Shown here: piece after piece, positions 41,246-64,000 of the stretch
Numbering within the stretch: the stretch's first letter is position 1
Layout of the letters: every line of letters begins with the position of its first letter
From: Phallusia mammillata
Lineage: Eukaryota
DNA: 64,000 bases
NCBI GenBank assembly: GCA_965637545.1
Contig: OZ281494.1
Location: 3,100,001-3,164,000 of the forward strand
Direction of reading: 5' to 3'
Program-made: the position numbers and the translations under genes
The notes under the pieces: model-generated
Told to the model about the DNA's origin: nothing
What the model saw: the letters and a program-made list of their open reading frames with translations, nothing else
Databases searched by the model: none

Positions 41246-41674
<429 letters not shown>

Positions 41675-42432: not shown

Positions 42433-42763
42433 CTCTTCAAACATTAAATTCTCTTGTTGGTAGAGTTGTGTTACTTGCTGTGTAGCGCAGTTCGCTAATT
42501 CCAAAATTTGTATTCATTCTGATTTTAATGTGGGTTTCATGTTTTGTCGTTGTACATACTTAGGTTTTTCATTAGACAATTTTATTTAAAATTTAAGCTG
42601 GCACGAAATGTGCAGTGACCCAACCAAAATGGATTGAGGAACTGCTAGAAAAAAAATAACAGTTTGCATTTGTGCACTTGGGATTTACCTTGAAGCTAAT
42701 GGACTTAGGAGCAGAGGAAAAAAATAAACTTTCCCCACCAAGTCTGCTTAAATGGTTTTTGTA

Positions 42764-45700
42764 ATGGATGCTCAACCAATGCCAACGCAAGGTGAGCATG
42801 TAATTTATAAATAGTAGTGTCACTTAATTTGTACCTTTGCTCCATTAGAACATAACGTAAATGGGTAGCACCAAAAAAATACAACAGAAAAAAATATATT
42901 GGTCTTATAAAAGTTTACTGACAGTTCGATGAACAGCAAAAGTGTCAATGAAAAATGTAAATTTCATCTGCACACAAATCTTGTTCAGATGAAATGATGC
43001 GACTGCGTAGTCAGCTTGCAGATACCGAGAGGCGCTTTGCTCTTCTTCAGCAGGAAAAAGTGCAAATGGAAAGTGATTTTGAATACAAAAGGTCCAAGAT
43101 CAAAGAGCTCTATTATGCAAAAGAAAGTGAGATGGCAATTTGTAGCAAATAAATTCAACCCACATAGCAAATTAACATGATGAAATGTAGGACAAATTTT
43201 TCGGCAAATTTTTACAAACTGTTTAATAGTAAATGCTGGTTACTTTGGCAAAGTTGGACCATACCAGTGAAAGTGTTCATTATATTTAATGCACCATCAC
43301 TTCGAAACAGTTTCTTTCTTTTATAAGATATCAATTCACATTTGCATTTTTCTGGCTTAACATTTTAGTTTTACATCTGTATACCGCCACCAAAGCCCTT
43401 AACTGTTGCATCAATCACAAGGGTCCATGGTATCACAGCAAGAGGTACTTGAAAGATATAAAAAGGTTCAAGAGCACTGACATAGATGATTAACTAAAAC
43501 ATAGATAATTATTTGTTTGCTGCCTCTACAAAATGGTTTACACCTTGTCTGTAAACTAAATTGTGTGTAGTGTGTCTGATCTATTTCGAGGTGCTATAGA
43601 GAGCTGTACTTCTTGAATTCAGTTTTATCTGTCTTGGCCCAGAAAGTAATAATATAGCTTTGGCCCAAACCAATTTGGTGCGGTTACATCACTGGTAATA
43701 AACAAGGAAACTTTACTATTAGACATGATCCGTGATCAAAATTCAAAGCTCTTAGAGGCCAGCAAACAAATAAGTCAACTGGAAAGCACTGTAACTTCCC
43801 TGCGAGAGGAAATTGAAAATGTGAAGATGATTGCATCAGTATCTGAAAATACAAAACAGGTATGATGAAAAGTGTTAGATTCTAAACGGTATGCAACTAG
43901 CATTTGTATTTCACACTATTGCCTTTTTGTATCACAATGTGGCAACTGATGTGGCCTTCATACCACTGATGATGGCATGAGCATTTGGCGAAACGTTTGA
44001 AATATAAAGCATGTCTTTTTATCTCTATTTGGGCGGTTATTTTCACCATTAAACAATGTGTTGAGGAGTTACATATGACATTATTTCATGTTTTTGGAAT
44101 GAAGATGTTCATAATAAATATCAAGAATTCCTAACTTATTGATGTTATATTGTAATTGAGGCATTCAATTAAAGCACTGAGCCACAAAGGAAAAACAAAT
44201 TCAATGATGTTTGGCAACTGAATATCGCAAAAAAAATAAATTGCCATTCATGACAAAAGTTAACCTTGTTAGGAAATCTCCATCAATATATGCTAACATA
44301 TATTCAAGTTACAAAAAAACATTTTTGGGCTCTTGTACGATGTTGTGCAGGGAATCAGTTTCTATAGATACTCATAGAACACATTTTTATAATGCAACCC
44401 CATGGAATATGCTGCTTACATAAGGCAGTTGGCATCATTGATTTTTATTGTTTGTAAGAATATATTGAACAGCAAACTGTATGCTTGTGTACAAAGCTTA
44501 GGAGCTGACAATGGTTGGATTGGCTGGCATATGGCTGATTTGTTACAGCATAATGTTTTTATTTCTTGCTAATTCCAATTTCCTGTGATTGTTTTAGGAA
44601 GCTGTGGAGGACTTGAAGAAGCATCATCTCGAAGAAATTGAATCTCTGAAATGTGTTTTGCAAGGTTAGTATTGATGTTAGCAAAATAACATTGCCTTTG
44701 TTTATCAAGTTCAAATACATGACCTTCACTTAAAGTTTTATTGCATGGCTTTGTATGGGTGGTTTAGTGTTGACAAATCTAGGCCTTGAGCCTGTTTGGT
44801 TTGGTATTTTCATGCAGGGGTGGGCAACCTTTGTTACTGTGAGGCCAAATACAGTAGCCAAAATTAGATCGGGGGCTGCACCTGTGTATAACACAAAAAT
44901 TTCCCTCATGTTGTTTTGGTAATAATGATTTGTGCGGTACATTAACAACGGTCTTTATTTGATTGAAAATAGTTAACTTTGTGGCTAAACAATAAGATTT
45001 GTGACGTTATAAATATTCGAGTAAAACTGGAAACAACAATTTAGGTGCCATTGACTTATACAATTTCCCTCTGCATGTACATAATTTCCCCACTACTGGG
45101 AAATTTCTTCTGGTAAAAAACCACTGCTTTAAGCAATATTTAACTTGCCCAGATACATTTGAGGACCAACGACGCGACCTCATCGAGCAATTCGGGCAGG
45201 AACGCCAACATTGGGAACAAGAAAAAGAGAAAATTTTGCATGAGAACACAAATTTTAAAGAACTACTTTCCAAGACAGAAGGGTCACTGCAAGAAAAGGA
45301 AAAGGCGCTGAGCAAGCAAGCGGATCAGGAGCTTGAAACAAGCATGATGATGGTAGGGCAGAAGTTTAAAGTATGAAATTAGTTACTTTATTGACATGGA
45401 CATTAGGTCAGCAACTGCTACTGTTTGGGCACATGGCATGCTATGCAAAATGTGTTAATCTTATTGGCCTTTCAAGAATCTAAATCTTCTTTAAACTGTC
45501 CTTTTTGCTAGGTATTTCCCTCGATTTTTCGTGTTCCTATTTCTTTAACTGTTTTTTGTGTCTTGCTGGTAACCTACACATACTTTTCATGCTGTTAAAC
45601 TTTTTTCACAAAATATGTCCTTTCTTGATAAACAAACCAATCAGAATCTATCAATATGTTTCCCAAGGCCCAAAGCGAAGCGGAAAACCTAAAATCTGTC

Positions 45701-48700
45701 GTTTTACCTCTTGAACAAGAAATTGCCGACCTAAAAGAAAAATTACGAATAGCTGATGAAGATATCATTGAACTTCGGCGGACGCAAACAGTTAACCACA
45801 AGGTTTAAAAAGCACTTTTTTGTTTCACTTTTTGCATGGTTAATTTTGATCTTGAGTTTCTTCCTTTGTGGATGATGTAGTAGTGTGCATGATCTCATGA
45901 GTTTGTAGCATAATCTGTTGCTTGTGTGTGGGCTAGTTGTGAGCAATTTCAGTATCATGGATTTATTTTCGTGAAACAGCAAGTAGGAGTTGGAACAGAG
46001 GACTGTGAAGACGTCAGTGGATCTGATCTAAATACTGAAGTAAGTTGGTTGCTAATTGTCCACTGTACTTAAGTTGTAGTAAATATAAAAATGGGTTTAC
46101 ATGTGTAGTTGGTTCCAATTTGTTGCCTTATAATAAATTTGTCGTACAAGATATGTCATTATCCTGATAAAGGCATTTTGTATGAGATGTCAAAATGTTC
46201 ATTGTTTATAATATTACTGCTGGATGAGCAATAATCGGTTGTATAAAAAGAAGTTCTTAAAAGACAAAAATGAAATATTATAGATAGCAATAAATTGGTA
46301 TTTCTGTGTAAAGCAGCAAAGTATTGAAAAATTGGTTACATTGACTTAAATATACTTTTAAGTAAGTACAAAACTGCCATTTTTTAAATATAAAACACAG
46401 TAATCTTGTAACTCAATAACCATAATGTTTTGACTGTTTTTTTTGGAGTAATGCAAATCAAGCCAAACAGACTGTTTAAATGTGTTTGAAATATTCTTTG
46501 GCAATGACTTTTACCTTGTTCTAGTAGTGGTTTAAGAATCAGTATAGAATAGTGGTAGTAAAATGAACGTATATTGTTGTTTTGTGGTCCTAAGTTGTTT
46601 CTTTCTGCCTTTTGGCTTAGATTGTTATTGCACACATGTTGTTTGCAAATATATTTTGGGAAGTACAAAATCGCATAGCTAAACACAATTGCAACAGGAT
46701 ATTCTAACCACATTTTTAACTTCCTTTTCATGGTGTTTTTAGTTGGTGCTTTTTTTGTTTCGAATGGTATTTGTGATGTGACGTAACCCGGGTTACATAA
46801 TTTTTAGTAGAACGTAAATGTTGGCCTGTAAAAAAACATTACACATCACTACCACAAGTGCTTTTTGTGGTTGTACAGACTAATTTACTTGTAAATGATA
46901 TTATTTTATACAGTAATGATTCCCTATGTTTTGTGAACATAATACTTCATTTTTCTTTTATGAGCTGTAGAAGCCAAGTTAAATCTTAACTGTTTTGACT
47001 TAAACTTGAAAAGGTATTATTATCATGACCCACTGAAAACACCTTTAGGCCCGTCTGGTTTGAAATTACTACTGGTTAATAGGCAACTCACGACCAATCT
47101 TAAGTCTACAAACATAAAAATAATGTCAAAAATAAGAAACCAAACTCATGCTTGTTTTCTGAATTTTTAATTGAAACCATGTTGAAAATGCGACAGTTCA
47201 GTGTAGTGTATTGTTCTATGGTGAAACTCTCACTGTTTTCTTGTTTTGACGTGTGGTAATGAATTTTGAAGAGAAATGATCAAACCTGTCACCTGAGAAC
47301 GTCCTGTTATTGACAAGCTGTGTGTGACAAAATGCCATTAATTGATTGCAAGCGCTAAAAAATATTGATCACTGGTTGTGCATTAAAATCTTGGTTAAAA
47401 TTTCAAAATTTAAGCTAGGAGTCCCCTTTTGAATTTATCGAAATCGTCAAAGCACATAAAATGCTTTACTCAACATATTAATGTTTACTCCCTAAAGCCA
47501 ATTTGTAAACTTGTGTTTGCCTGAGCAAGAAACTTGAGCCGCATTTGTTCCAATCTATTGAATAAAACTAGGCAGCCCAAATGTGGTTTCATGTAAGCAT
47601 AAAGTTTGAGGCGTTGCCTGCCCACTGATGATAATAATGAAACACACCAACAAACTTAACTGTGTAAATGGCTCTGTTTAAGTCAGTGGAAATGATGGAA
47701 TTACATACAAAACTATGTTAAAATTTAAACTTCTACTTTCACATTGTTGTAACCATCCGGTTTTTGACACTGCAAAGATGTCATTTGAAAACCTGTATAA
47801 TGTTATTGTCCTTGCTTAGCTTACATTTAACTTTTTGGTACACACAGGTGAGGGAATTAAGTTATTCCCTGCAATCCGAAAAGTCGTCACGAACCGACCT
47901 TGAACTTTATGTTGAAGTGCTTAGTCGACAGAAGACAGTATTACAACAAGAAAATGATATTCTGAAACGTGAAATGCATGAAGGTAAATACAAATATGGT
48001 TTCTTATATCTCATAAGATTTCAGTTCCTACATTTTGAATGCAATGGCTAAATTAACATAATTGCCTTATATTTATGTATTTCTTTTTATTTTTCAATGT
48101 AAATTGCAGGTTTTCAAAATTTAAATTTTGTTGTTATTTCATGGTGGATTTGGTAATTGACTTTCAATAGCTTTCCAGTTTCAATGTGTTATAGTTAGTA
48201 AATAATGAGAATAATTTTAAAGTATAAGCATTTCACTTTGTTTAAACTTGACATCAAACATACCTTACTCTTGTCATTAATTTTTTGTGTAACTTAGAGC
48301 TGCAACGGAAAATTTGCATTTTTTTAAGTGGAAAGTCTATGAAAAGTTTAACAAACAAACCTTGTTTTATACGGCTCATTATTTAGCTTTTGTGCAGCTC
48401 CATAATTTGCAATTCTTTAGGAATAAATGTAGTAAAATGTTTAACATTTGACCTTGTATTACAGTTTGTAGGTCACTGGAACAAGAGCAAAGCGATCACT
48501 TGATGTTGAAACAGACTTGGAATCGGGCCAACGAACACTTCATGCTGTCACAAGATCAACTTATGAATGAACTTAACGCTGCCAAAGCTTGTCTGGCTAA
48601 AAACCAACTTAACCAAATCAAAAGCACAAAAAGGGTATTTGTACATATATAAAGCAGATTAATCATCATTCATCTGTCACAATAGTTCACAATAAGGATA

Positions 48701-51700
48701 AAAAATTACTTAGAAGCTGTTTAGAAGTTAAGTGAAATCAGCTAAGGAATCTGACATTTAAAATCGATTTAAATACTTTCAAAATTTACATTCTATCCCA
48801 GTATAAATCTTTATGCCTGTCCAAATACAACAAACTTTGGTTCGTTCTGACCCGTTTGGGCCTAAATTTCCTGATTATGCTAAGATCCAGGTTACCCAGG
48901 ATTTTCTGTATTTACTTTCAAGCATTACAAATTTGTTTCATTATTTGCTGGAGCCACCTTTACAAAAAAAATCAGTTCAATACAGTGGTGGAATTCACAT
49001 TTTTTGTCAGTCGGTTCTATCACAAAAGTCATATATTTCAGCCGGTTCTGGTACAAAAAGTCCATTGACAATAACCAGTAATGCTAACCGGTTCGCTGAT
49101 CTCATAAAATTTTGTGACACGGTTCTATAGAACCGGCGCGAAACGGCCAGATTCCACCACTGGTTCAGTAGTACAAATATTTTTTGGCATTTTTTTGCCA
49201 ACTTAACGAAATTAGGATTACTAAATTATTTATCACGCCTTAACAGGTTTAAATTTATTTCAAACAATCACATTTAACTGTTACCATTCATCACTAAAAT
49301 GGTGGTTTTGATAACAACTGGAATGATACCTAAATATAAAACTTTTTTACATGTGTTATTTCTCAACAGGTGGCTTTACTTTTTGCATAACTTTTTTATT
49401 CAAACCTACCGACTTTTAGTATTTGGTGTGCACAGTTGTTTCGTTAGGTGCCTTGATGTGCATGAGTTTGAGTTTGAATGAAAAGTAGATTTAATTGTTT
49501 GCATAACTGTGATTTATTTTTGCATGTTTGTCATTTATTTGCATGTGTTTTTCATTTTATTCGTTATGTACACTTTGTTTCTGCTTAAAATACCTATCTT
49601 AAAACCATACAAAGTTTAAGTTGTAGAGATGAATCCTGTCATAGCGATTTGCAAAGGTTTTTGTGCAATTAAGCAGACAATTTTCTTAAAAAGTGACGAA
49701 CTACGTTTTTACGATCACTATGCCATGAACAATATGCAATTAACTGGATTTGTCTGTATTACAAAGTAAAATGCTCTAAAGAAATTGCACCAAACTTATC
49801 TATCTGTTGCCTATGGGCTTCAAGGCTTCTACATTTTGTACAACTAATTTTTTTTACCATTCAAGCCTGTCTGTTAAAATGGTGACATGGTAACTAACCT
49901 AATGATACATCATATATGCAAGTTGTCTCATTTTGACCATGCTGATTCAAGCCCCATAAGCAAGAATTGAAAGAAGTTTTTTGTATTAAACTACAACTTG
50001 TTTGTAGTTACTTGACCAACTGATATGTATTTTTCGAATGTGCTCAAATTTGTTCAAGCATAATGTATAATAATATGTTTCAGGTTTTATCAGCCGACGG
50101 ATTTGAAGTTGTTTCTTCTCTTCCTAAACAAGCTAAGGACGTCGTGGGTGCAACCTCTCAAATTAACGGGTAAATTATTAAACCAAATTTTCACGAACCC
50201 CAAGTTTAATATGATGAAAGTTTCTAGCAAGTGAAGAAACTCTTAAAAGTTAGGTGGGACTAAAACTAAAAAATCAATATTTTGTAATTGGCAACTGTCG
50301 TAGATTTTACTGTTTTTGTGTAAATTCAGATAGTGCTTGTCCATTTTGCTTTTGTCCTTTTGGAACCTTAGTACAGTTAATCTACAAATCAAGATACATG
50401 TTAGTGAAATAAAATAGCTTAAATTGCCTGAAATCTGGTTTGGTTGCAAACAAGAATAAACAAGAAGGGTAGTATGATAAATACAGCCTGATTGCCTAGG
50501 AAAGTTTAAATTGAGGTATAAAATGTGTTTTGCATCCAACATTTGCCCTGGTTAACAATGTTATATCCGGAATCATTCTTTTTTTGAAAACTGCATATCA
50601 CACAAATTTATCCAATCTCATTTTCTTGTTCCTAGGTCGGCATTTCCCGACAGTAATTCCTTCGGTTCATTTCAAAACTACGAGAAAATGCAAGAACCAG
50701 TGTTAGCGGAACCAATTGCATCCCCAGCCACCGAGCTTCAAGATACTATTTCAATTTCATCTGTTTCATCTGTGCCTGAAGCGGGAAGCTTGATGCCAAA
50801 TGACGAATTAAGACCACCAAGAGGTAACTCTTTGCTCAATCAAGGTTTTTTACTTGATTGGGGTTGCGTAATTAGGCACATATTGTTTGTTTTTTTCGAC
50901 TAAAAAGCGCTTGTTTTCACATTATGGTAAACTGTTTGAAATTGACATTTACAAAATAAGCTTTGTTTACTTTGTACATTTTGACCCTAATTGACCTTAA
51001 CCAGCAAGCCTGCAAAATAAGAAACTAAAAAAAGACCATTAACAAAAAATATGACAGTGAAAGTTTATACTTAAATGGTTTTTTACATTGTAAAGCACTT
51101 GAAAGCATCATGTAATTTGCTGTTAGAGTCACTCATGTTTTTTATTTGCGGTGTTTTGTTTTGGTAAGACTACATTGAGAGTCACTTTTCATTTTGTTCT
51201 GGTTATGGTTGGATGGCATTGTATAAGAGCATGTCTCCATAGTTATTTAAGTGAACATCCCACCTTCAGCCAAACCTTAGTATTTCCCTCAGTTGGTATA
51301 AAAAAATGTGTCTTTTAATCCTGTCAGCTCAAAGCAAGAGTTTGTCAGTTTTGTCCTAAAGACAAATTTAGTTAATTGCATCTTATCTCTGGCCCTATTG
51401 TTTGTTAAGTGAAAAATGGTTATTCTTATTATAGGTCCCAATTGTTTATTGAGCAAACCTAGTTAATCACATGTTATGGTTAATTGCATGTAAGCTTTGA
51501 ATACAGGGTATGTGTAGTTAATCGAAATCGTGTGTAGATTTTTAACCCTGTTACTTCTTTACAGTGAACTCTGCTCCTTTACTGACTCTCACAAATGCTG
51601 ATTCCTCCACAACACAAAATCAATCAGATGAAATTGTAAGAGTTATTTATTATTTGAATTTTAACTGGAACATTTTTATGTAACACAAAAATTTTCAATG

Positions 51701-54700
51701 TAACTGTGTTTTGTGCAAGCTACACTTCTTTCAGTACTTTCTAAAAAAATTCAAACTTATTTGAACAACTCAATGTTGAAATTGTATTAGTATCAAGTTT
51801 GTTTCTTTGTGATACACTACCTAATTTACTACACACTAAATACTGTACACTTCTAATTAAAACCGAATAGTTTTTTCTGCCAAAAAAGCATCTATAACCA
51901 AATTTCTTCCATGCTGTAACAAACTGCAGCAATTTTCTTTGCATGACGATTGAGTTATTTTGTACAGGACAATATGGCATCTCCAACCCGTCATCTTAAA
52001 CTGCTTCGAGTCAAAGAAACAGAGATCGAAACTTTAAAACAGCAGGTCTGTAAATTTTTACCTTTATGCTGAAGTTACCTACAAAAATCCAACTCACATT
52101 CGAACTATGATAAAATGTCTGTATTCCCTACGCCAAAACTACAGATGTGGGTACTGCATAAAACTACTGCCTAAAACTGTTGTCCTTTTTTGCAGTGACA
52201 TCATTTTGTGTCAATCCGCTTAGTTCTGTAAATTCGAGAATAATTTACCAAGTTTAAAGCCTATTTCAAAAACATATGTCATCTAATTAAAGAGAACCTG
52301 TGCATATATAGATTACTTCTTGCAGACATTTCAACAATTGCTGTTGTCATCACCAGTGCAGGTTGTCAACTGTGCTTAAAAAGGAAGTTTATATTAGCAT
52401 GTCATCTAAAATCCCATTTAATCACTCCAAAATCTTCAACATATCGTACCTGCACAAAATAATCTGTTTAAACTTAAACAAAGACTTAAAGTTTAATATG
52501 ACAACATTTGCCAAGCAGGTCACCACTTTAGAGGGAACAATTTTGGATTTGGAGAAAAAATTGGCGTTTGAGCGAGAATCACGATTAGATGTGGAGGAAT
52601 CAGTGATGAGAAGTTCAGAGGATGCCCAGAAGCAAATCAGGGAGCTAACAGGAAAGATTCATAATATCGAAGTGAAGATCGGGGAGGATAAAACATATAG
52701 AAAGAACAAGGAAGCAGAAGATAATGAAAAACTGGTAATTGTGTGTTAAAGAACAACTTCTACTTGATACAAATTTACATACAACACTGGATTGCATAAA
52801 GATCATGTTGTTCCCATACGTTGCAGCACGGAAATGTAAATTCTGGGGAGTCATGTTATGATTTAGTCTGTCACATCTTGCAGGCCTAAACTAAAATAAT
52901 AAAGTGGCTTACTAACGCAAAAAAATAAATAAATCTTTTATAGGGAGTTTAATGAAAATGCCAAATTGTATAACAGACAACCTCGCATTTAATTGCCAAA
53001 AATCTCATGTAAAACTTTCGTGGGTTTATGCATTTACTCATAATGTACAAATAAATAGAATAGTTTCTTATGATGGCTACAGTTTGGGACTTAGTATGCA
53101 TTTAAGCTAAGTTTGGGATAAACCAAAAGCGTCTACAAATCCCTTCAAGTCAAAATATACAAACGTTGGTTTGAACTTGTTGTGATGTACTATTTTCAGC
53201 TGATCATTACTGCCGACCGCGAAAACCTTCGTGACAGTTACTTGAAGTTGAAAAAAGAGCAAGATGCGATGAGATCGTCTTTCATGCGAAGTAGACAATC
53301 CTTGCAGAAAGATTCTAGCACACCAACTTCTATGGAGGTAAGACAATGTCAAGCAGAAGTAAAACAAAATTGAAAAAAGTTTTATTGACTTAACTGAGAC
53401 AGGTCAAAGAGGTTTCAAAGACCTAATTTGACATACTTCGCTGACATATTTTGCAAAAAATCATTTTTTGCATTACTATCATGGAAAACCCCAAGGGGGT
53501 AAATCACAAAAAACTATTTTGTATTCTTATTTCTTTTTTTGCAGGGTTTGCGAATAAGTTTGGACAAATACAAAGAGGCATTTGCAATTGCACAAGTGGA
53601 GAAAAACAGCCTGGAATCAACGCTTCGAACTCGAATCAGTTTGCTGGAATCCACCATTGAAAGTGAAAAGGTAACGTTAACAGCTTCTGTTAGCTCAGCA
53701 ACAGGAAGGTTTGACCAGGAAGTCTTCCATCGCATTTAGCTCTGCAAGTAACCCATGGTGTACTTCTGTGATGAGAAATGTTTTGGTACACAATAATTGT
53801 TAATTTGTTGTGTTTTATTATCTGTATTGGTGTCACTTATGATGGCATGAACATTTGCTGAAATGTTTGATGATAAAGCATATTATGCCAGGCCTATTAA
53901 TCTAAGCAAGCCATTCTTACAAGCATTCCAACATGGCAAGACATAGGCTGAAAAAATACCCTGTGATGGGATTTGAACCGACAACAAAAAACTGTCTTTG
54001 ACTAGCTCATTTATTTAAATGTTTAATAATCACGTTTGCGAAAGTTGGTGGCCTAAAACATTCCTGTGTGGCAAAGCATAGGCTAGAAAAATCTGCTGTG
54101 GGGTTTCGACCCATGATTGAAGCCTTTCTTGAACCTGCGCTCTACTAACTGAGCTACACAGGTGTAGAGCTAAGACCATCAAAAGTTCAATCAGAAGCAC
54201 CGTTGCCTACCTTGTATTCTACACATGTCAGCCTTGCAGTAGGGGCTCTCAAGTTTGACTATTGATCAGCTAAGATCGGCATGCATTGCTGGGATTAATT
54301 CTGAAGCATTTAGCATGTCCCTTTTCATTATGTTTAGCAATGGACAAATCCATGGTGTGAGTTTAAAACTACTTTTGTGTTGACAGATGGAGAAGGAGCA
54401 AATGGAAGCTGCTTTACTCCAAGATGTGGAAGAAGCAAGAAACAAGGTTTCATCTTTGCAATCTTTGCAAACTCAACTTATTAAAGAAACAAACCAAAAC
54501 AAGGAGCTGCAGGTCGGAACATTTGATTTTTTTAGAACTTGTCGTATACCATTCATTGCTCTGAAAATGCCATACCATTTTGGTGGGTCAGCAAAATATA
54601 AGTTCTTGAAAAACAACTAGTATTGTGTTTAGCCTCATAGCAGTTGAATGATAAATTGGTTAAATATGCAACCTGTTGGCTAAAACGCTTGCTCATTATT

Positions 54701-57519
54701 ATCTCTGTCATGTGTCACTAGACCACTACTTCCAAACTGTGAGCCATGGGCCATAAAAACATTTTAAATTTGGCCTCAGATCGATTGGAACTTGTATTAT
54801 TATTATGTGATTAAATGAGGCCACTCGGGCCTGTTTAATTATGGCTCCCTTCCCCATTGGTTTTTGGTTGCAAAAACCAATCATGTTAATGGGTCAAATG
54901 GTGTGTATATAGTAAATCGGTAAATCGGACGTAGAATATATAAACTTATAGGGATGAGCCAAAACTACAAATGTTCTGTTTGGTCGAGCACCGAGCATCT
55001 CATGGTAATGCACAGTATTGCTTGGTGCTTCGTGACATCACAAGCATTCTCAATTCCAAGCTAGTTTAATAATTTTCCAATTAAAAAACAGTCATTTTGT
55101 TCTTGGCTACCCTTTCGAACACTAGTTTTGTATAAATGGGCATGAATATGCAAGTTTAATGCTCGGGTCAGTTCGTGCAACCGTTCGGCCGAGCACCGAG
55201 CATCAAAAACAACGATGCTCCGTACCGAGTACTCGGGTTCTGAGTCGACTTGCCCCATTCCTAATGTGTAGGGAAGCCACCTTCTAGTTGTAAGGATGAC
55301 TTTATCATTTCAGATCCAGGTTGAGAAGGACCAACTTTCGATGGAATCTATTCGAAGCAAATCTAGAGAGATCATAAAAGGTTTCAAAGAAAAACTTCGC
55401 ATTGAAACGTCTGAAAAGGTTAAAACGTTACCTTGTGTTATGTGTGACTACAAAGCATGTGTGAATAAAAATGAATAATCACTAAATGCACTGGATTCTA
55501 AAAAAGATATCATTTCTGGCAAATGATTTTTGATGATTACAGTTGTTGTTAGTTGAAGTGTGTGCGTTTGAAAATTATTTAATCAGTTGAAATTACATTT
55601 TTTGTGGATTGAGTGTTTACATTCTTGTTAGCGATGGTCAAAATAATGTTACATGTATCACCACACAAGTCACCTTTATAGCAGTTGAGTATATAAAAAC
55701 ATATGAACACATGACCAAATTCCAAATAGACACAGATCATGCATTTGTAGCAAACTATTCTTTTCAAAGAGAGCTAACAAATACTAACCTGGAAATATAT
55801 GTTTCCATTTTTGATGTATAAAGTATGACAGATGTAAGTTTGTTTCAAGAATTGCAATAATGGGAAATATTTCCAGAATTAATTTGCAAGAATTTACACA
55901 AAAACAGCTATAAATAATTACTTGTTTTTGTGTTTTGCAATGTTTTATTCAATTGCTTTGTGTAACTAATTTAATGGTTTGAGAATTGACTTGAATATTG
56001 TTTGCTAATACTTTTTTACGCATTTGTGATTAATTTGCTCATCTTGAACAAGTTTCCTATATTCACAATAATTTTGGCTCATTGTTTTCAATCTAATGGG
56101 TGTGCTTGTTATTGTGCTTTACCGGCTTTGCTTTTGGGCACTAGGAGGCGCTTGAGAGCAAACTAGCTGATGCAAAGAATCAGCTTCGATCCTTGCAGGA
56201 ATCCTTGGAAACCAGCGAGCTCGTTCAGCGAGATTTTGTTAAACTTTCGCAATCTCTTCAGGTGTGTAAAAATCACCCTCACAGCATTTACACACTGCTT
56301 TATATTTTTTGCTAATTCTTTCCTTTTTAACCTGCCATGCCAAGCCTAAACTGGTGCCTTTATGTATTTCTAGCTTAAGTAGAAAGAAGCTGCAGCTTTT
56401 CATGTATCGGCTAAATGCTTTTAGTTCTTTTGTAGAAAGAAATTTTAGAAATCCTAATAGATAAGAAAAAATACAAAAAGTTGAATTTTTCATTGTCATC
56501 TCATACTGCTATTTGTCAAGCGACCAGATAGTGGAGGGATGCACTGTAACACGACTATTAAGATTTTTTATTATTTTCTAATGTACTAAATAAGTTTAAT
56601 ACAAACAGGTCATTACTAGAAGTCTCCTTTAGTTATTGTCCTGGACCTAAATATTTGCTGTGATAAACAGGTATACTGTCTTTCTAAAAGTTGCAGAACT
56701 CATGACTACTTTTAAGAATATGAAAATTATCCTGTAATAAAACGGACTTTCCATAAATTGCATTTAAGCAGCCACATGTTATAACCTTTGCAACAGTCCA
56801 TTGTTTTGCCTGAACCTTGTAAAAAAAGATTGACTTTTTACACCATTAGTCTTTCTATTTGCTTTCAACACCTTGCTTTCCTAAATCTGTGCATGCTTCT
56901 TCTTTGCATGGTGCCTGCCGTAGTTGTTGGTAGTTTCACCTGTCTGTGGTGAAATTTAAGATTACATAAAGATTAGCCATTTTGTTTCACAGTGACAGTT
57001 TCAATGTATCTTGTCACATTTAGCAGTACTATTTAAGTAGTTTGTCTATGTCATTGAACTCCTAAACTATGTCTCTTTTAAACCTGTTGGCACTTCTAGT
57101 GAATACACTAGACTCATCCCAGCTGCTTTGTAATACAAGAAAAGCATTTAATTTAATGATGAATATAACAGCCCAAATAGATGTAAAAAGTGATACGCTT
57201 TATTATGCGAACAATTCGGCAATTGCTCATTCCAGCATCAGTGATACAACAGGCCACATCGGACGATTTTAAGCATGTCACTTTTTATGCCTATTTGGGC
57301 CATTATATTCGTAATTAAACTTATAAACAAATTCATGTATAGTATTTCAGAGATTGACTTTTTTGACACAAACTGAACAGAATTCTGTAACTTCAGGTTC
57401 AACTTGAGGAAATCCGACTAAAAGAGGAAGCGTCAAGCTCGAAACAATCGCAAACAAAAGCTGAAAATCATTCACCATCCACTGAAAAATCTTTAAAATC
57501 ACGTAACATCCCTGATTAG
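42764..57519 (+). CDS. RABEP1: Rabaptin-5 (Rab GTPase-binding effector protein 1), ~812 aa
   Basis: Exons 42764-42791 (in-frame ATG also at 42752), 42989-43126, 43723-43859, 44598-44664, 45153-45352, 45668-45802, 45980-46039, 47848-47983, 48465-48634, 50084-50169, 50636-50823, 51565-51635, 51968-52045, 52519-52734, 53200-53337, 53545-53670, 54387-54512, 55320-55418, 56145-56261, 57397-57519. Motifs KRSKIKELYYAKE, IASVSENTKQ, LKSVVLPLEQEI, EKSSRTDLELYVEVL, TWNRANEHF, SELVQRDFVKLSQSLQVQLEEIR match Rabaptin. Confidence 0.95.
43960..44010 (+). ncRNA. Degenerate hammerhead-like motif, family B
   Basis: CTGATGA tggcatgagcatttggc GAAA cgtttg; helix II disrupted; similar to 53833-53880. Confidence 0.4.
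48828..48908. mobile_element. Tc1/pogo-type MITE, degenerate
   Basis: TA-flanked; shares the gacccgttt...aagatccag core with 57707-57806. Confidence 0.55.
48983..49162. mobile_element. MITE family CAGTGGTGGGATTC with 8-bp TSD (hAT-type)
   Basis: cagtggtggaattc...gattccaccactg; TSD gttcaata / gttcagta. Confidence 0.88.
53833..53880 (+). ncRNA. Inactivated hammerhead-like motif, family B
   Basis: cacTTATGAtggcatgaacatttgcTGAAAtgtttga: the core G of CTGATGA and the base after GAAA differ from the 43960 copy. Confidence 0.35.
53940..54163 (-). mobile_element. Two tandem tRNA-derived SINE copies (family of 2329-2500)
   Basis: Minus strand tagctcagttagtagagcgc...gggtcgaaacccc...gatttttctagcct at 54070-54163; second B-box/tail fragment at ~53940-53985. 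Confidence 0.7.
54949..55263. mobile_element. Putative MITE
   Basis: Imperfect inverted ends tagggatgagcc / gccccattccta; internal repeated cgagcaccgagcatc; CpG-rich island in a CpG-poor intron; no clear TSD. Confidence 0.5.
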
Positions 57520-57706
57520 ATGCAGCCTATTTTGTTGTGTTTTGCGCAAATGCTTACTGCATGGTGACGGTAGGCATTAAAGTCAAGGAAATGGGTAAAA
57601 AGGTGCAAAAACTTTTATTGTACACTAGAGGTTTTTCAAACAAGGGGTGATTGTAACTCTCTCAAATCTACATACTTTTGGAGTAAATTAGCATACAAAT
57701 GGAATA

Positions 57707-57806
57707 CAATAAACCTTTGTTAACCTGGACCCGTTTTGACCAAAACGTTTGCCCAGATCAGGCGAAGATCCAGATTAAACCGGTCCGGTTAAACCAAGGC
57801 TTACTG
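57707..57806. mobile_element. Tc1/pogo (Tigger-like) MITE in RABEP1 3' region
   Basis: TA|caataaacctttgttaacctggacc ... ggtccggttaaaccaaggcttactg|TA. Confidence 0.75.
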
Positions 57807-59893
57807 TACTGTGAGATTAGTGGATTAGGAAAACTTTTTTTTTTAAATACTAGCCAAAAATAAATGATAGAAAAAAAGGTTTAGAATCTCTGTTGTACAC
57901 TTAGTGATAGTTAAGGTGATAGCAGATTTTAGACCTTCACTTGCCCTTTTTCTATGCTTATACACAAAGCACCATATTTTTGGAGTTTCCTATTCACAAA
58001 TTTTAGGCAAAAGTGTTTGGTGCTTTTTAAATTTATGTGTCATGATTTTTTCATGGCATCGCAGGAATGAATACTCTTAAAAGCACAGAACTCAAATTGT
58101 CATGTTTTTCATTGCACTGTAATCCCACTAGGCACAAATAAACCATGAGTAGTTAAAAACAGATCACTTTAAATTTATCCAAATTCCATCAGTGGTACTA
58201 TTCATGAACATATTAATATTCTGGTACATTTAAAACAAGCTTTTTAAGTCTTACTCAGTGGCCATCTTTTTTCTTCCTCTGTACCCCATGTATTTTTTTT
58301 ATTCACTTTCATGTGTTTAGTATGTGTGTGATTTTTGCATAGCTGAACATAAAAATCTATTGTCTATGCTTTTGTTTTCCATATATTTTGTCTTAAAAGC
58401 AACGTTGCGTCTTTGAAAGTGTTTTTATCGATCAGTGGTTTGTCCCACACAACACAAAACAAATATATGATTAAAACAACGTTTTCCCTTGGGCTCTTAT
58501 TTATTAAAATGTGTCTCTAAATTTGTTTTATTGTGCAATATTGTTCAGTAAACACCCATTACCATGCAATTAAATATCGTCTGTGGAAAGCAACCTTTCC
58601 CACGGTACATACTGCACTGATAAACCTTTTGAATGATAATGTACACCCGAAATGTCCTAATAGCATTTTTACTGTTCTGGCTTATATCAAAAAAATAACT
58701 TTTGGAGCAAAAGTATCTAAATCGATATCTAAATCAAGGTAACATAGATTTTACATAAAAAAATTTCTAATAAAATTTTCATCTCCCATATGCATTAGTT
58801 TAATACTATTGTTGTTTAGGAAAAAAAATAAGTTTTTAGTTGAGTAAATGGCAAACATTTTGCACTACAGTTGTATCAGTCCAAGCATTGTCTTGGAGAC
58901 CACCCTTTAATGAAATTAGGATTGCAAGTAAAATCGAAAATTTGTTATAAACCACTCTCCATTTTTAAGCATATTTAATGACCACTGCATTGTTTTCTTA
59001 ACGACCAGCCTTAATATTGAACCATTTGTGCATCCAGTAATATCTATTTTAAGCTCCTGTTCTAATCCTAGTTTATTGGTTTTAAACTGAAACATTTTGC
59101 AAAAAGTGTATGATGGAAATGCATGATTTTAACTTTCAAATTCTAAGTTTGTTTGTTTGACTAAAAGTTGATTGCCTGACCAAACAGTGTTTTTACCAAG
59201 TCTTATCAAAATTGTAAAAGTAAAACTTTTTGCAATGTTTGCATATCTTGTAAGAAAAAAGTATGTTGTTTATGTTTGGCGAAGTGGGAATATGGCAAGC
59301 TCTGCACACTGGGTTTATTTGGTTTTATATGTATGTTGTTTGCAATTGCTTTTGCATTAAAATGTTGTGTACCTGCATGTAAGAGTGTTTTGTGTCTGTT
59401 AGGAGCAAGTTTCTGGTACATTTTTACCAGCCACAGATAAAGTTGTACCAACACATAAAGAGAACTGCACAACATTTTGTAACAGGTAAATGCTTTGTTA
59501 CTAGTAAAGATACACAGTTTTAGTTTGTAAGACTACATGGGAGTTCTTGTAAGCTCGTGTTTTTTCGGCGCAATTTAAGAATTGTTTGCGCCCTAAGAAT
59601 ATAAACATATCAATTAAAAAAAATGTTTCAAACAGATTCAATATTATCAAACAAATACGTTTTAAATAGGTTACATCGTCAAAGCTAGTCCAAGTTCATG
59701 GCTTCATCTATTTACCTTAAAGTTACTGATTAACCTTCTGTTTCAAGTAGGCAGGATTACCAGCAACTAACATTTATTTTTTCTAAATATACAATGTGTG
59801 TGGTTTCTGGCTTTCAATTTAAAAACCACAGAAAATAATCTGTGCCTCCAAAGTAAGGATTTTGTAGCTAATGTTTTGTCTGCATGACCGGCT

Positions 59894-62729
59894 ATGGAGC
59901 AAGGTAAGCTTTATTATTTAACAAACACAAATGGCACTTAAATTGATTTATTTGTTGCTTTGGCTTATTTTTTTGGCTGGTGTTTATTTGATTTCAGAAC
60001 TTTCATAATCACGTATTAATATAAGTTTCAGAGCCAGATATTAAGTTGGAAGATTCAGACATATGCATTGCCCAATTCCAGCAAGAGAAACTGGAATTGA
60101 CCGACAAGTTACTGGAAGTTCAACAACTTTTAGATGAAAAAGAAAGTAAGGAAATTTACTTATGCTAACAAAATGTTTAATTTGTGAGCTATAATTTTAT
60201 TATCAATAGTCACTCTGGTGATTTGAAATTATTTTTTGAACATATTTTCTAAAAAACATGACTTAAACAATATTACAACAATTCAATGTCTGTCTTTATT
60301 AAACTGTTACAAATCACATGCTATTTTTAATCTGTGTGATTCATCAAACTAATATTCACCTCAGAAAAAGGAAAAACAAGTGCCTAATGTACTCTTTTTA
60401 ACTTTCAGATTTATATCGTGAGCAACACTTTAAACTTTTGGAAGCAAACAAACAAATAAGCGACCTTGAAACCACTATTGCTTCACTGAAAGATGAAATC
60501 GAAATTTTTGTAAAAATGATGTCATCAGTTGCTCTGGCTGAAAACAAGAAACAGGTAAAATAATTCTAGGTGTAATGTTTTTACCAATTCTTGACACCTA
60601 AACCTAAAATTTGAGTTTTTGCATTTCTTGCGTATTCAATTCAAATTCTACATTTTTCTATTTTACCTGTGTTGGTAACTATACATATATAGAAATACAT
60701 TTTTTGCCTAGGAAAGCACACCGTCACCACCACGACAACCAAAACTCTTAAGAATCAAGGATGCAAAGATTGAATCTCTGAAGCAACAAGTGAGTTTGGT
60801 TTTTCCATTCAAATAAAGTTTTCATACTGTGAAAGCATGTTGTACAATCTAACAATCATTTATTTTATACCTCAAGCCTACTTTGGCCATTAAAAACTTG
60901 TGCAGCCAATCACAAAACTAACTGCTTTCAGAACTGTCTGTTACAGATTTATGTTAACTGATGAGTTTTACAATTCCATTTGCACATTTATGTGCTGGAG
61001 GTTTTTTTGTATTCTGTATAAATGTTACAAAATAATAAATGTTAAAGTACATTACAATTTTTGTTATTCAAGTTGTGAGCCCTGCTATGATTATGTTTGA
61101 TAAAAAAAAATCCATCCAAATATGTTTGCAAGCCATGTGTGTTAACCATGTAATGGTTTTCTGTTCTGCAATTTTTTTCAGTATTTATTTTGCAGAATAC
61201 AAAGCTTGGAAGGGATATGGCGCAACTGCAAAAGACGCTTTTAAATGAAAAACAATTAAGACTGAGTGTAGAGAAATCTGTGATGCGAAGCTCAGAAATT
61301 TCTGAGAAACAGATTGAAGAACTTACTGCCAGGATTGATGAAATTCAAGCAAAGATAAAAGAAGATCGGATACACAGGGAAATCAAGGAAGCTGAAGACA
61401 ATGAAAACCTGGTGATAAATTGATAAAAAAAGAAATATTCTTTTTTGTACATGTTTGTTTATCAAAAACATTGTTACACAATCTCAAGGTTTTAAACATT
61501 TTAACAAGAAATAGACAAGTAAATATATATTGTGAAAAACAAGAACTGGGGAACTATTTTATCTTATAAATGATGTAAGAGTTGTTGAAATTTTCTAGTT
61601 TTCACAAATGTATTGCCTCTATAGCATGTGGCATGCCTCTTGTTTGTTATTGAAATAAGTTGCAGATCTGTTGTTGTAAACGAAATGCTTAAAAAATAAC
61701 CTGATGGTTCTATTGGGAATAAAAGCATACAAACTACAACTTAAATTATAAGAAATTGACATATTAAGTATTGTTGCAGCTCATCCTTACAACTGATCGT
61801 GACAGGTTGAGAGAAAACTTCCTAAAGTTAAAAATCAGGAAGATGCAAGTGCTTCAATGTTAAATGAAAGTGAGAATTCTTCACCAATGGAATCCGAAAC
61901 TCATACATCAGAGCAGGCAAATTATTCTCAACACTTAGTTTAACAATAGTCAAATCCACACACAAAAAATTACCTTTGTATTTACTTGATGTTAATAAAA
62001 TTGGTTGGTTTTTTAGCAATTTGTTGATATTGTTTGGTCAAATGCATGTTCCCTCAGAAGGGGGTGCAGCAGGTGCACCACACCAAGTCCATAACGGTCT
62101 AAGGGTCCATGAATATCATATTTGGAAATAATAATTGGCAAATAGAAATTGATGTATTATTGTTTCTTTGTAGCTGCAATATATTGCTGCTGATTGTTAT
62201 GAAATAGTTTATATTTTTTGTTTTAGGTTAAAAAAGATGAACAGTTAATTGAATCAATTCGAAGCAAGTCTAGGAATATTATAAGAAACCTCAAAGACAA
62301 ACTACGAAGTGATTCCACTGAAAGGGTGATGATGCTTTTTACTTTTTAATAAAGAGATTAAAGACCTAATAATCAAATACACAAAAATAGATGAACAACT
62401 AATGAAATTATAGTATAACTGTAAATATTTAAGCTTACGCTTTAAGCCACTTTTGTAAGCCTTTTAAAGTAAAATGTCCATTCAAGTTTTAACTGTTATG
62501 AGATTGATTACTGTAGGAAAAACTGCTTAACCCTTTAGCAGATTTACGAAATATATTGGTAGCAGAAGTTAAACCCAGCCAATATAAACTATATTGTAAT
62601 TGTTTTTGCAAACTATAGCCCCAGAGTGAAGACACCAAACCAGCACAAAATGAGCATGAAAAAGCGGCACAAAAAGAAATTTGCTACCGCTTTCCTCCGC
62701 ACAGTGAATCCACTTCTTGTACTGATTAA
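59894..62729 (+). CDS. Truncated tandem paralog of RABEP1 ('mini-Rabaptin'), ~303 aa if a 1-nt frameshift is repaired; possibly a pseudogene
   Basis: Exons 59894-59903, 60032-60145, 60409-60554, 60712-60789, 61196-61411, 61780-61916, 62227-62325, 62619-62729 correspond to RABEP1 exons 1, 2, 3, 13, 14, 15, 18 and probably 20. Exons 13', 14' and 18' have identical lengths to the parent (78, 216, 99 nt); 14' is 38/72 aa identical. Exon 15' is 137 instead of 138 nt (A5 run at ~61830-61834) and ends at a GC donor. Confidence 0.85.
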
Positions 62730-63598
62730 CTATTGCATTCATCACTCGTTTAAGAAATTGTATTTTTTTTTCTATTCAAAGTCACAGACCTCTCATCTAG
62801 TTAGAGTTTGTTGTTTTTAAACTATACTCTTTACTGTGTTGCTGATGCTATGCATTGTGCCATATGTGCAAAACATTTTCAAATGTTTCATTTGTTTTGG
62901 TCGTGTTTTGTAGATGCATGCGGATTTTATCTTACAAAATTCATTATACTGTACCATTGGCATCAAATAACGTGCTTACATCCGTGGTCGGTTTTTGATG
63001 ATTTGAAATTTTCTTGCCATTGTATGCAATGTTACATGTTGATTGTATTTGCTTGTTGTAGGTAAAACAATATTTGCACAAATAAACTACATTTTTCTTT
63101 GCTTTTTATTGCAAGTTAGGAATATTGTATAATATTTTGTCAATGTGGTTGTTAAAGGGTAAAACTAATACCGTACTTTAACAGCATTTATGGAAAAGGT
63201 TCATTCTGTTCTCCAACGTTATTGGTTGGAATTCTTTCGCGCTTCCACAAGGTTCGTGCGAATTTCCTGATCATTGTGGAAAATTGTTTCCTATGTGTTG
63301 GAATGTAGTGTGAAACATATGCCAGGAAAACCAAGTGTAGAAATCGGGCCCTAGTCGTTTTGTAATGTTTGTATTAGGTAATACGCCCTCTTAATAGCTT
63401 ATTTAACTCATATTAACTCATTTTTTGTTCCCAACACATTTCCTTGAAACATTCAGTAAGGAGAAAAGGTGTTCGTGCGGCATGACTGCGCATTTTCTTT
63501 GCTATGTCATTTCCAGTGCCGATCGGTACACATGGTCGTAATCGTAAACACAACACGCTACTAGCTGTACGTGCTCAGGTGGTTGATAAAAGTGAAGT

Positions 63599-64000
63599 AT
63601 GTCTTATACCATAATTGGTTTTGAAGGAAGTGCCAATAAGTTGGGCGTTGGGATAGTCAGAGACGGTCAGGTGCTTTCCAATCCCCGACACACCTATATT
63701 TCGCCTCCTGGGGAAGGATTTTTGCCGAGAGAAACCGCTCAGCACCACAGAAGTTGGCTGACAAAGATCTTGCGTAAAGCTTTGGACGAAGCTTCGGTGT
63801 CTCCAAATGAAATAGATGCTGTTGCTTACACGAAAGGCCCAGGTATGGGAGCACCTCTTGTTTCAGTTGCGGTTGCAGCTAGAACTGTGGCCCAACTTTG
63901 GAACAAACCCATAATTGGAGTAAATCATTGCATTGCCCATATTGAAATGGGACGTTTGGTCACTGGTGCAGATAATCCAACTGTGCTCTATGTTTCTGGT
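63599..64000 (+). CDS. OSGEP: tRNA N6-adenosine threonylcarbamoyltransferase (Kae1/OSGEP), 5' part
   Basis: [20 protein letters not shown]...[18 protein letters not shown]...[12 protein letters not shown]...[41 protein letters not shown]; open to the window end with no intron. Confidence 0.98.

What the first reader, a model, noticed from the sequence alone, without database searches (positions are those of the whole stretch)
59894..62729. Exon-pruned 'mini-Rabaptin' directly behind RABEP1: possible Rabex-5 decoy or modulator
Seen: a second Rabaptin-like gene built from exons 1-3, 13-15, 18 and a final exon. It keeps intron positions, phases and exon lengths while introns show no recognisable similarity; exon 14' is ~53% identical in protein. 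Exons 4-12, 16-17 and 19 are cleanly missing at phase-0 junctions. Established: Rabaptin-5 binds Rabex-5 through its central coiled coil and Rab5-GTP through the C-terminal QRDFVKLSQ region. Inference: the paralog keeps the N-terminal coil and the region aligning to the Rabex-5-binding coil, but lacks the Rab5-binding tail and linker. It could be a lineage-specific regulator that binds Rabex-5 or heterodimerises without engaging Rab5. Open exons with diverged introns suggest long purifying selection.
Basis: partly seen in the sequence, partly recalled or inferred. Interest (0 to 1): 0.75.

Follow-up and report, generated by a model that had tools for sequence, protein, structure and literature searches.

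The report
Expressed truncated Rabaptin paralog behind RABEP1
Directly behind the sea squirt Phallusia mammillata's Rabaptin (RABEP1) gene lies an old, shortened copy that is still transcribed, correctly spliced and shaped by selection on its protein; it keeps Rabaptin's central partner-binding coil and has lost the part that binds Rab5, and in this assembly one missing base truncates it.

Summary
The window is from Phallusia mammillata. The 20-exon RABEP1 gene (42752-57519, +) is followed by a partial tandem copy with counterparts of exons 2, 3, 13, 14, 15, 18 and a last exon. Spliced contigs from three RNA-type studies confirm the internal junctions between these exons, including a GC-AG intron.

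- Exon 1' (59894-59903) has no RNA support.
- The window lacks a G after 61832, which breaks exon 15' (stop at 61861). All three RNA studies carry the G and an open 302-codon frame.
- Only exons 13-15 keep their lengths.

Third codon positions are near-random (identity 0.39) against 0.69 and 0.77 at positions 1 and 2, so the copy is old and constrained at the protein level. It evolves about four times faster than its parent. It arose after the split from Ciona and Clavelina.

It keeps the CC2-1-equivalent coil and lacks the Rab5-binding exon. Rabex-5 binding is only an inference: three of five human contact residues are charged in all the phlebobranch and aplousobranch tunicate Rabaptins compared. 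Sister-species conservation could not be tested.

The parts
42752..57519 (+). Parent gene: Phallusia mammillata RABEP1 (Rabaptin), 20 coding exons, 818 aa (P0002)
   Evidence: P0002 (UniRef RABEP1, Phallusia mammillata) maps exactly onto 20 exons. Pfam PF03528 covers residues 19-361 and PF09311 covers 491-786.
59285..59485 (+). Transcribed stretch just past the RABEP1 3'UTR. It ends in a strong donor (CAG|GTAAAT) that is spliced to 60026. It is either a non-coding 5' exon of the mini gene or read-through from RABEP1.
   Evidence: The X1 contig runs continuously from 57424 to 59485 and then joins 60026 (GT..AG). The X2 RABEP1 contig stops at 59284, directly after an AG. The stretch has several upstream ATGs and none in the main frame.
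59894..59903 (+). Candidate coding exon 1' (ATGGAGCAAG|gtaagc, phase 1), the positional counterpart of the end of parent exon 1 (..ACGCAAG|gtgagc). Unverified.
   Evidence: It is the only in-frame ATG with a donor matching 8 of 9 consensus positions between 59285 and 60025. No RNA contig covers it.
60026..60145 (+).
   Evidence: Contigs X1 and X2. 29% aa identity to parent exon 2, with the same phase-1 end (GAA A|gt).
60409..60554 (+). Exon 3' (N-terminal coil). The first in-frame ATG of the observed transcript is at 60516.
   Evidence: Splices 60145|60409 and 60554|60712 in X1 and X2. 63% aa identity to parent exon 3.
60712..60789 (+). Exon 13' (Pro-rich hinge plus start of the central coil), 78 nt as in the parent
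   Evidence: 54% aa identity.
61196..61411 (+). Exon 14' (core of the CC2-1-equivalent coil), 216 nt as in the parent
   Evidence: BLASTP 38/71 identical, E = 3e-18. Aligns to human C2-1.
61780..61916 (+). Exon 15' with a GC donor. The window lacks one G after 61832 (AAAGAA becomes AAAAA), which shifts the frame and gives TAA at 61861-61863. With the G the exon is 138 nt as in the parent.
   Evidence: The G is present in RNA contigs X1, X2 and X9 (three studies) and absent in DNA contig X11. Words specific to the deletion allele were found only in X10 and X11, both from study P4. The joint 61914->62225 with 3 ambiguous bases fits 61916|62227, GC..AG.
62227..62325 (+). Exon 18' (short helix; 99 nt against 105 in the parent)
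   Evidence: Splices in X1, X2 and X9. 55% aa identity.
62619..62963 (+). Last exon: coding 62619-62729 (TAA at 62727-62729), then 3'UTR to at least 62963. Homology to parent exon 20 is not demonstrable.
   Evidence: Contigs X1, X2 and X9. Chance-level identity. Two nonsynonymous differences between the window and the RNA contigs, at 62667 and 62700.

Best explanation
This is an old partial tandem duplicate of RABEP1, specific to the Phallusia lineage, that still behaves as a protein-coding gene. A DNA-level duplication copied the gene with its introns. Three intronic deletions then removed exons 4-12, 16-17 and 19. All boundaries involved are phase 0, so the frame survived.

The copy is transcribed on the + strand and spliced at the ancestral exon borders. 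In the common allele it encodes about 300 aa:
- coil 1 (exons 2'-3');
- a Pro-rich hinge;
- coil 2, the equivalent of Rabaptin-5 CC2-1 (exons 13'-15');
- a Ser/Glu-rich linker;
- a short helix (exon 18');
- an unconstrained tail.

It has no Rab5-binding helix.

Inferred mechanism, not shown: through coil 2 it pairs with itself, with full-length Rabaptin, or with CC2-1 partners (Rabex-5, GGA-GAT, FIP200). This would uncouple those partners from Rab5-GTP binding. The result would be a Rab5-blind modulator of the Rabaptin/Rabex-5 module, not necessarily a pure decoy.

The haplotype assembled here carries a 1-nt deletion that truncates the protein just after coil 2. The 5' end and the start codon are unresolved.
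For: - Spliced contigs from RNA-type runs of three studies give all six internal junctions and an open 302-codon frame from exon 2' to the stop.
- Codon-position identity to the parent over exons 3, 13, 14, 15 and 18 is 0.69/0.77/0.39, against a chance level of 0.28 at position 3 (chi-square p = 4e-17).
- NG86 gives pS = 0.84 (saturated) against pN = 0.27.
- Introns are unalignable.
- In the ML tree the mini is sister to the Phallusia parent (support 96/94), with branch lengths 0.82 and 0.21. An earlier duplication is disfavoured (AU p = 0.028).
- The mini matches the parent more often at columns invariant in three tunicate orthologs (60%) than at columns where the parent differs from both (34%; p = 6e-4).
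- Human C2-1 maps to exon 14' plus the start of exon 15'.
- All a/d-type core positions examined in that coil are identical or conservative between mini and parent.
- The Rab5-binding region equals exon 19, which is absent.
- Heptad occupancy and proline placement fit a two-coil layout.
- Clavelina has a predicted RABEP1 isoform that skips exactly the Rab5-binding exon, so a Rab5-blind Rabaptin is plausible in tunicates.
Against: - The only 5' structure seen (59485 joined to 60026) has upstream ATGs and no in-frame AUG before 60516. Exon 1' has no RNA support.
- The assembled allele is frameshifted.
- No such protein exists in the protein collections searched.
- No ortholog could be examined. 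None was found within 10 kb downstream of RABEP1 in Clavelina, or within 3.7 kb in an unidentified tunicate contig.
- 40% of the positions invariant in three orthologs have changed. The pan-metazoan motif MIASVSENTKQEA is disrupted.
- Three of the five human Rabex-5 contact positions are charged or polar in these tunicates.
- The runs are only guessed to be RNA, and contigs give neither strand nor expression level.
Confidence: 0.6

Rival explanations
1. It is a transcribed but decaying duplicate (unitary pseudogene). It is carried along by read-through from RABEP1 and spliced because its splice sites have not yet decayed. The protein was constrained for most of its history and recently became dispensable.
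For: The X1 contig runs from the RABEP1 last exon and 3'UTR into the mini exons. The observed leader has upstream ATGs and no in-frame AUG for 110 codons. The reference haplotype has a frameshift. The protein evolves four times faster than the parent, and the conserved N-terminal motif is lost. Both window-versus-RNA coding differences are nonsynonymous.
Against: The common allele has an intact 302-codon frame despite saturated synonymous sites. All splice sites are functional. The frameshift was seen only in the study that probably supplied the assembly. Exon 3', upstream of the first AUG of the observed isoform, still shows pN = 0.19 against pS = 0.71. That implies exon 3' is translated from some other start.
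Confidence: 0.2
2. It is the downstream cistron of a Ciona-type operon (H3.3 - RABEP1 - mini). The RABEP1 mRNA ends at about 59284, directly after an AG, and the mini mRNA is made by spliced-leader trans-splicing at 59285, at about 59869, or at 60026. This concerns how it is expressed and is compatible with the best explanation.
For: The X2 RABEP1 contig ends exactly after the AG at 59283-59284, with 2 unmatched letters. The X2 mini contig begins at 60024, which is the acceptor plus the shared 'AG'. That pattern is expected at a branch between alternative upstream sequences. X2 has no contig over 59285-60023. The same H3-RABEP1 order is seen in Clavelina.
Against: No spliced-leader sequence was seen. 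Contigs cannot show RNA ends. There is no canonical AATAAA before 59284 (read). The X1 cis-splice shows that at least some transcripts are simply continuous.
Confidence: 0.3
3. One reading: a Rabex-5 decoy that binds Rabex-5 through the central coil and withholds it from Rab5-positive membranes.
For: The coil aligning to human C2-1 is kept and the Rab5-binding exon is lost. In human this coil is sufficient to bind Rabex-5 (PMC4102244).
Against: Human L613, L617 and V624, needed for Rabex-5 binding, are D, R and D in the parent and the mini, and polar or charged (D/N, R/Q, D) in Ciona and Clavelina. It is therefore unknown where, or whether, tunicate Rabaptin binds Rabex-5 in this coil. Human C2-1 alone activates the GEF about 3.3-fold, which is not decoy behaviour. 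The same coil binds GGA-GAT and FIP200.
Confidence: 0.2

Closest known systems
RABEP1 / Rabaptin-5 (parent gene in this window, P0002; human Rabaptin-5)
   Same: Shared intron positions and phases. 43-63% aa identity over exons 3, 13, 14, 15 and 18. Keeps the coil equivalent to CC2-1, which in human is the dimerisation coil and the binding site for Rabex-5, GGA-GAT and FIP200.
   Different: About 300 aa instead of 818. Lacks exons 4-12 (most of Pfam Rabaptin PF03528 and the linker), exons 16-17, and exon 19 (the Rab5-binding helix QRDFVKLSQ). Evolves about four times faster. The N-terminal motif MIASVSENTKQEA is disrupted.
RABEP2 (Rabaptin-5 beta), the vertebrate paralog
   Same: A second Rabaptin gene that arose by duplication and diverged in sequence.
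   Different: From established knowledge, RABEP2 keeps the full architecture including Rab5 binding. The Phallusia copy is an independent, lineage-specific, exon-pruned duplicate (tree).
Exon-19-skipping RABEP1 isoform X2 of Clavelina lepadiformis (P0006)
   Same: Joins the exon-18 equivalent directly to the last exon and removes exactly the 39-aa Rab5-binding exon.
   Different: It is made by alternative splicing of the single gene and keeps every other exon. It is an NCBI model whose RNA support was not checked here.
Truncated duplicate genes that retain an oligomerisation domain (dominant-negative or decoy paralogs in general)
   Same: Keeps a dimerising coiled coil and lacks an effector-binding module.
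   Different: No interaction or phenotype has been shown for this gene. The analogy is an inference.

Membership tests
Rabaptin (RABEP) gene family | Significant sequence homology to a bona fide Rabaptin | tested here: met
   Exon 14' against P0002: 54% identity, E = 3e-18. phmmer against 1.84 billion representatives gives P0002 at E = 7.9e-9 as the only family hit. Exons 3, 13, 15 and 18 are 43-63% identical.
Rabaptin (RABEP) gene family | Shared exon-intron structure (intron positions and phases) with RABEP1 | tested here: met
   Boundaries and phases match for exons 2, 3, 13, 14, 15 and 18. The junctions are confirmed in RNA contigs.
Rabaptin (RABEP) gene family | Pfam Rabaptin (PF03528) or Rab5-bind (PF09311) match above threshold | tested here: inconclusive
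   Only single exons (26-72 aa) could be submitted by reference, and none matched at E <= 1. The parent matches both families. The spliced protein could not be submitted.
Rabaptin (RABEP) gene family | C-terminal Rab5-GTP-binding helix (QRDFVKLSQ; PDB 1TU3) | tested here: not met
   The 1TU3 match covers parent residues 737-788, which are exon 19 plus the start of exon 20. The mini has no exon 19, and its last exon has no similarity to this helix.
Rabaptin (RABEP) gene family | CC2-1 coil with the hydrophobic Rabex-5 contact residues (human L599, L610, L613, L617, V624) | tested here: inconclusive
   The coil is present and aligns without gaps. L599 and L610 are hydrophobic. Positions 613, 617 and 624 are D, R and D in both the mini and the parent, and polar or charged in Ciona and Clavelina.
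Processed (retrotransposed) pseudogene | No introns, poly-A tail, dispersed location | tested here: not met
   At least six introns at ancestral positions, and a tandem location 2.4 kb behind the parent.
Non-processed (duplicated) pseudogene | Disabling mutations and neutral evolution | tested here: inconclusive
   The window allele has one frameshift. The RNA alleles of three studies are intact. The substitution pattern is strongly non-neutral.
Ciona-type operon, downstream gene | Upstream poly-A site abutting the AG acceptor of the next gene, with a spliced leader on the downstream mRNA | not testable with these tools
   Only contigs were available. The contig ends at 59284 and 60024 are suggestive, but no leader sequence was seen.

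The most novel reading that the evidence does not exclude
A separately encoded, Rab5-blind mini-Rabaptin is co-transcribed with its parent in an operon or read-through unit. It pairs with full-length Rabaptin or with Rabex-5 through the CC2-1-like coil and so tunes the Rab5 positive-feedback loop. Null alleles segregate in natural populations. This would be a natural dominant modulator of early-endosome Rab5 activation, and it could be tested directly by mRNA injection in transparent Phallusia eggs.
Probability: 0.15. Interest if true: 0.6.

Novelty: new variant of a known kind. Interest (0 to 1): 0.4.

Why it matters
Rabaptin-5 couples Rabex-5 GEF activity to Rab5-GTP. Which of its binding modules matter in vivo is still debated. 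Here evolution has kept, for a long time, a separate gene holding only the N-terminal coil and the CC2-1-like hub, without the Rab5-binding helix. If the protein is made, it is a natural separation-of-function allele in an organism well suited to live imaging of endosomes. It is also a clean example of an exon-pruned tandem duplicate that stayed under protein-level constraint, possibly expressed from its parent's transcription unit. Outside tunicate and endosome biology the interest is modest, because truncated lineage-specific paralogs are common.

Tried and rejected
- Pfam scans of single mini exons gave nothing; the exons are too short.
- A PDB sequence search with exon 14' gave only chance hits.
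- The search of 1.84 billion representatives with exon 14' found only the parent and two unrelated coiled-coil proteins.
- A profile of parent residues 477-739 plus the mini exons (A1) found only a 54-aa exon-14 fragment from a tunicate contig in a JGI metagenome. That contig (L002) holds a RABEP1 ortholog and no mini copy in the 3.7 kb available downstream. A second alignment (A2) was worse and was not used.
- Contig look-ups failed for both Ciona RABEP1 isoforms tried (P0007 and P0005), for Styela RABEP1 and for the Phallusia parent. Only Clavelina could be inspected, and it has no convincing mini exons in 10 kb downstream; the best hit had E = 0.77.
- Pairwise dS could not be computed because synonymous sites are saturated.
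- Rfam found nothing in 57000-64000.
- The processed-pseudogene reading was rejected because introns are retained.
- Recent gene conversion was rejected because third positions are near-random.
- Assembly chimera as the cause of the 59485|60026 joint was rejected because the joint has canonical GT..AG ends with a strong donor.
- The spliced mini protein could not be given to the protein-search, Pfam or structure tools, which accept references only. No fold prediction or whole-protein family scan was therefore done.
Full report
**What is in the sequence**

The window has no N. Its + strand carries, in order:
- a histone H3.3 gene (41264-41671; Pfam Histone);
- a 20-exon Rabaptin gene (42752-57519);
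- the feature under study;
- the start of a TsaD/Kae1/OSGEP-type gene (ATG at 63599; PF00814).

The Rabaptin gene encodes exactly P0002, which UniRef names Rab GTPase-binding effector protein 1 of Phallusia mammillata. It matches Pfam Rabaptin (residues 19-361) and Rab5-bind (491-786).

Downstream of its stop codon, open frames with splice-site flanks reproduce parent exons 2, 3, 13, 14, 15 and 18, plus a last coding exon.

| Mini exon | Amino-acid identity to parent exon |
|---|---|
| 2' | 29% |
| 3' | 63% |
| 13' | 54% |
| 14' | 53% |
| 15' | 43% |
| 18' | 55% |
| last | 27% |

For exon 14' BLASTP gives E = 3e-18. Sensitive blastn finds DNA similarity only over exons 3, 14 and 18 (65-67%); the introns are unalignable. 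That the junctions are all phase 0 is not remarkable: the end of exon 3 and every boundary from exon 13 to exon 20 of the parent are phase 0.

**Transcription and splicing**

Logan contigs of three runs that the tool guesses to be RNA (X1, X2, X9; three studies) were laid on 57300-63250 together with one DNA run (X11). X1 and X2 each hold one contig that joins 60026-60145, 60409-60554, 60712-60789, 61196-61411, 61780-61916, 62227-62325 and 62619 onward. X9 confirms two of the joints.

Every joint has GT..AG ends except 61916|62227. The tool prints that joint at its leftmost position, with three ambiguous bases. Shifted by two, it is a GC..AG intron, which is the only recognised splice type among the four possible cuts. 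Intron removal at oriented splice sites shows that the material is cDNA from the + strand.

First, no RNA contig covers the proposed exon 1 (59894-59903).

In X1 the sequence upstream of 60026 is 57424-59485. This is the last RABEP1 exon, its 3'UTR and 200 further bases, ending in a strong donor (CAG|GTAAAT). With that leader the frame is open from 59383. It has no in-frame AUG until 60516 (codon 110), and it carries several upstream ATGs.

In X2 the RABEP1 contig stops at 59284, immediately after an AG. The mini contig starts at 60024, which is the acceptor plus the shared 'AG'. Nothing is laid between them. This pattern is expected if several upstream sequences join at 60026. No leader was seen, and contigs cannot show RNA ends.

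It mirrors the end of parent exon 1 (..ACGCAAG|gtgagc, phase 1). It is plausible but unverified.

Second, the window's exon 15' is 137 nt. Relative to all three RNA data sets it lacks a G after 61832 (AAAGAA becomes AAAAA). This shifts the frame and gives TAA at 61861-61863. With the G the exon is 138 nt, as in the parent, and the frame runs 302 codons from exon 2' to TAA at 62727-62729.

The DNA contig X11 agrees with the window. A 60-base query made only of words specific to the deletion allele is held only by X10 and X11, both from study P4, which is probably the source of the assembly. It is held by none of the other DNA-type or RNA-type runs listed for the species. This rests on two sampled words, so it is weak evidence.

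The insertion allele occurs on two backgrounds. X1 and X2 differ from the window at 62667 and 62700; X9 does not. The deletion is therefore best read as a rare or private truncating allele. The truncated product would still contain both main coils.

**Age and selection**

Over exons 3, 13, 14, 15 and 18 (223 codons), identity between the copies is 0.69, 0.77 and 0.39 at codon positions 1, 2 and 3. The chance level at position 3 is 0.28 (chi-square p = 4e-17). NG86 gives pS = 0.84, beyond the saturation limit, and pN = 0.27.

A copy drifting neutrally for that long would not keep half of its residues, an open frame and seven working splice sites. A rough partition suggests the mini lineage accumulated non-synonymous change at about a third of the neutral rate (my arithmetic; an inference).

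An ML tree on the shared columns puts the mini copy as sister to the Phallusia parent (96/94), inside a clade with Ciona and Clavelina. Terminal branches are 0.82 for the mini and 0.21 for the parent. Forcing an older duplication costs 9.7 log-likelihood units (AU p = 0.028). Seven residues derived in the parent are shared by the mini, and seven are still ancestral in it.

The mini matches the parent at 60% of columns invariant in three tunicate orthologs, against 34% where the parent differs from both others (p = 6e-4). Part of that contrast is expected from post-duplication change in the parent.

Constraint is relaxed, not absent. 34 of 85 deeply conserved positions have changed. The motif MIASVSENTKQEA, conserved from tunicates to vertebrates, is disrupted by an insertion. 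The last exon looks unconstrained.

**What the protein keeps and lacks**

PDB matches of a vertebrate ortholog (P0013) locate three regions:
- human C2-1 (4N3Y_B, residues 552-642);
- the GGA-GAT-binding fragment (1X79_B);
- the Rab5-binding fragment (1TU3_F).

Through the family alignment, C2-1 corresponds without gaps to parent residues 501-588. That is exon 14 plus the first 14 residues of exon 15, and the mini keeps exactly this stretch. The Rab5-binding match covers parent residues 737-788, which are exon 19 plus the start of exon 20. The mini lacks exon 19.

Heptad occupancy and proline placement suggest this layout:

| Residues (approx.) | Element |
|---|---|
| 5-88 | coil 1 |
| 90-99 | Pro-rich hinge |
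| 100-205 | coil 2 |
| 206-233 | Ser/Glu-rich linker |
| 234-262 | short helix |
| 267-302 | Pro-containing tail |

**How far the Rabex-5 inference goes**

In human, mutating L599, L610, L613 or L617 of Rabaptin-5 to Asp abolishes Rabex-5 binding, and V624D impairs it. C2-1 alone raises Rabex-5 GEF activity about 3.3-fold (PMC4102244).

In the alignment, positions 599 and 610 are hydrophobic in all tunicates. Positions 613, 617 and 624 are D, R and D in both Phallusia copies, and polar or charged in Ciona and Clavelina. The alignment there is anchored on both sides by conserved motifs and has no gaps.

The mini copies its parent at every core position examined. Whether this coil binds Rabex-5 in these tunicates at all is open. 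The same human coil also binds GGA-GAT and FIP200 and is needed for endosomal recruitment (PMC8728625). Self-pairing or heterodimerisation with the parent is the most conservative inference. 'Decoy' is one possible outcome among several.

It is suggestive that NCBI predicts a Clavelina RABEP1 isoform that skips exactly the 39-residue Rab5-binding exon. A Rab5-blind Rabaptin may be a recurrent theme in tunicates.

**What could not be done**

No genome of a close relative (Phallusia fumigata, Ascidia, Ascidiella) was reachable. Only Clavelina and one unidentified tunicate contig from a metagenome could be inspected, and neither shows a mini copy downstream of RABEP1. This agrees with a Phallusia-lineage origin and says nothing about conservation within the family.

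The mini protein is in neither protein collection searched. Since even the Logan contigs that contain it did not yield an entry, that absence carries little weight.

The spliced protein has no reference, so it could not be sent to the Pfam, homology or structure tools.

**Verdict**

The feature is a real, expressed, correctly spliced and selectively constrained exon-pruned paralog of RABEP1. It has an unresolved 5' end and a truncating allele in this assembly. Its function as a Rab5-blind modulator acting through the CC2-1-like coil is plausible but unproven.

Noticed in passing
window 41264-41671 and 42715-42795; L001 8029-8439: A histone H3.3 gene sits directly upstream of RABEP1 on the same strand. 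An AATAAA at about 42724 lies about 25 nt before the RABEP1 start region. The same H3-then-RABEP1 order is found in Clavelina lepadiformis (L001).
   Followed up: partly
window 59251-59285: In run X2 the RABEP1 3'UTR contig ends at 59284, right after an AG and with no canonical AATAAA nearby (only AAGAAA-like hexamers). This may be a poly-A site abutting a trans-splice acceptor.
   Followed up: partly
window 60020-60032: Tandem acceptors six bases apart (tataAG|TTTCAG|AGCC). The RNA contigs use the upstream one. Both keep the frame, adding Val-Ser.
   Followed up: yes
window 61917-62226: A GC-AG intron in the mini gene. The homologous parent intron has a GT donor (GGAG|gtaaga).
   Followed up: yes
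window 57795-57874: One DNA contig of X11 (depth about 150 against about 320 elsewhere) skips 80 bases in the RABEP1 3'UTR. This is probably a heterozygous indel in the sequenced animal. Several SNPs and 1-2 nt indels between runs occur across the 3'UTR.
   Followed up: no
P0006 vs P0004 (Clavelina lepadiformis RABEP1), residues 758-796: Predicted isoform X2 skips exactly the 39-aa Rab5-binding exon. Ciona X4 and Clavelina X3 isoforms skip a block of about 118-132 aa in the middle of the protein.
   Followed up: partly
L002 (JGI metagenome 3300001913, 31-kb contig): A 'metagenome' contig with 47% GC carries a tunicate RABEP1 ortholog; exon 14 had been called as a 54-aa bacterial-style ORF. It is host DNA in a metagenome.
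   Followed up: partly
window 63599-64000: Start of a TsaD/Kae1/OSGEP-family gene on the + strand, about 640 bases past the last base (62963) covered by a mini-gene RNA contig.
   Followed up: partly
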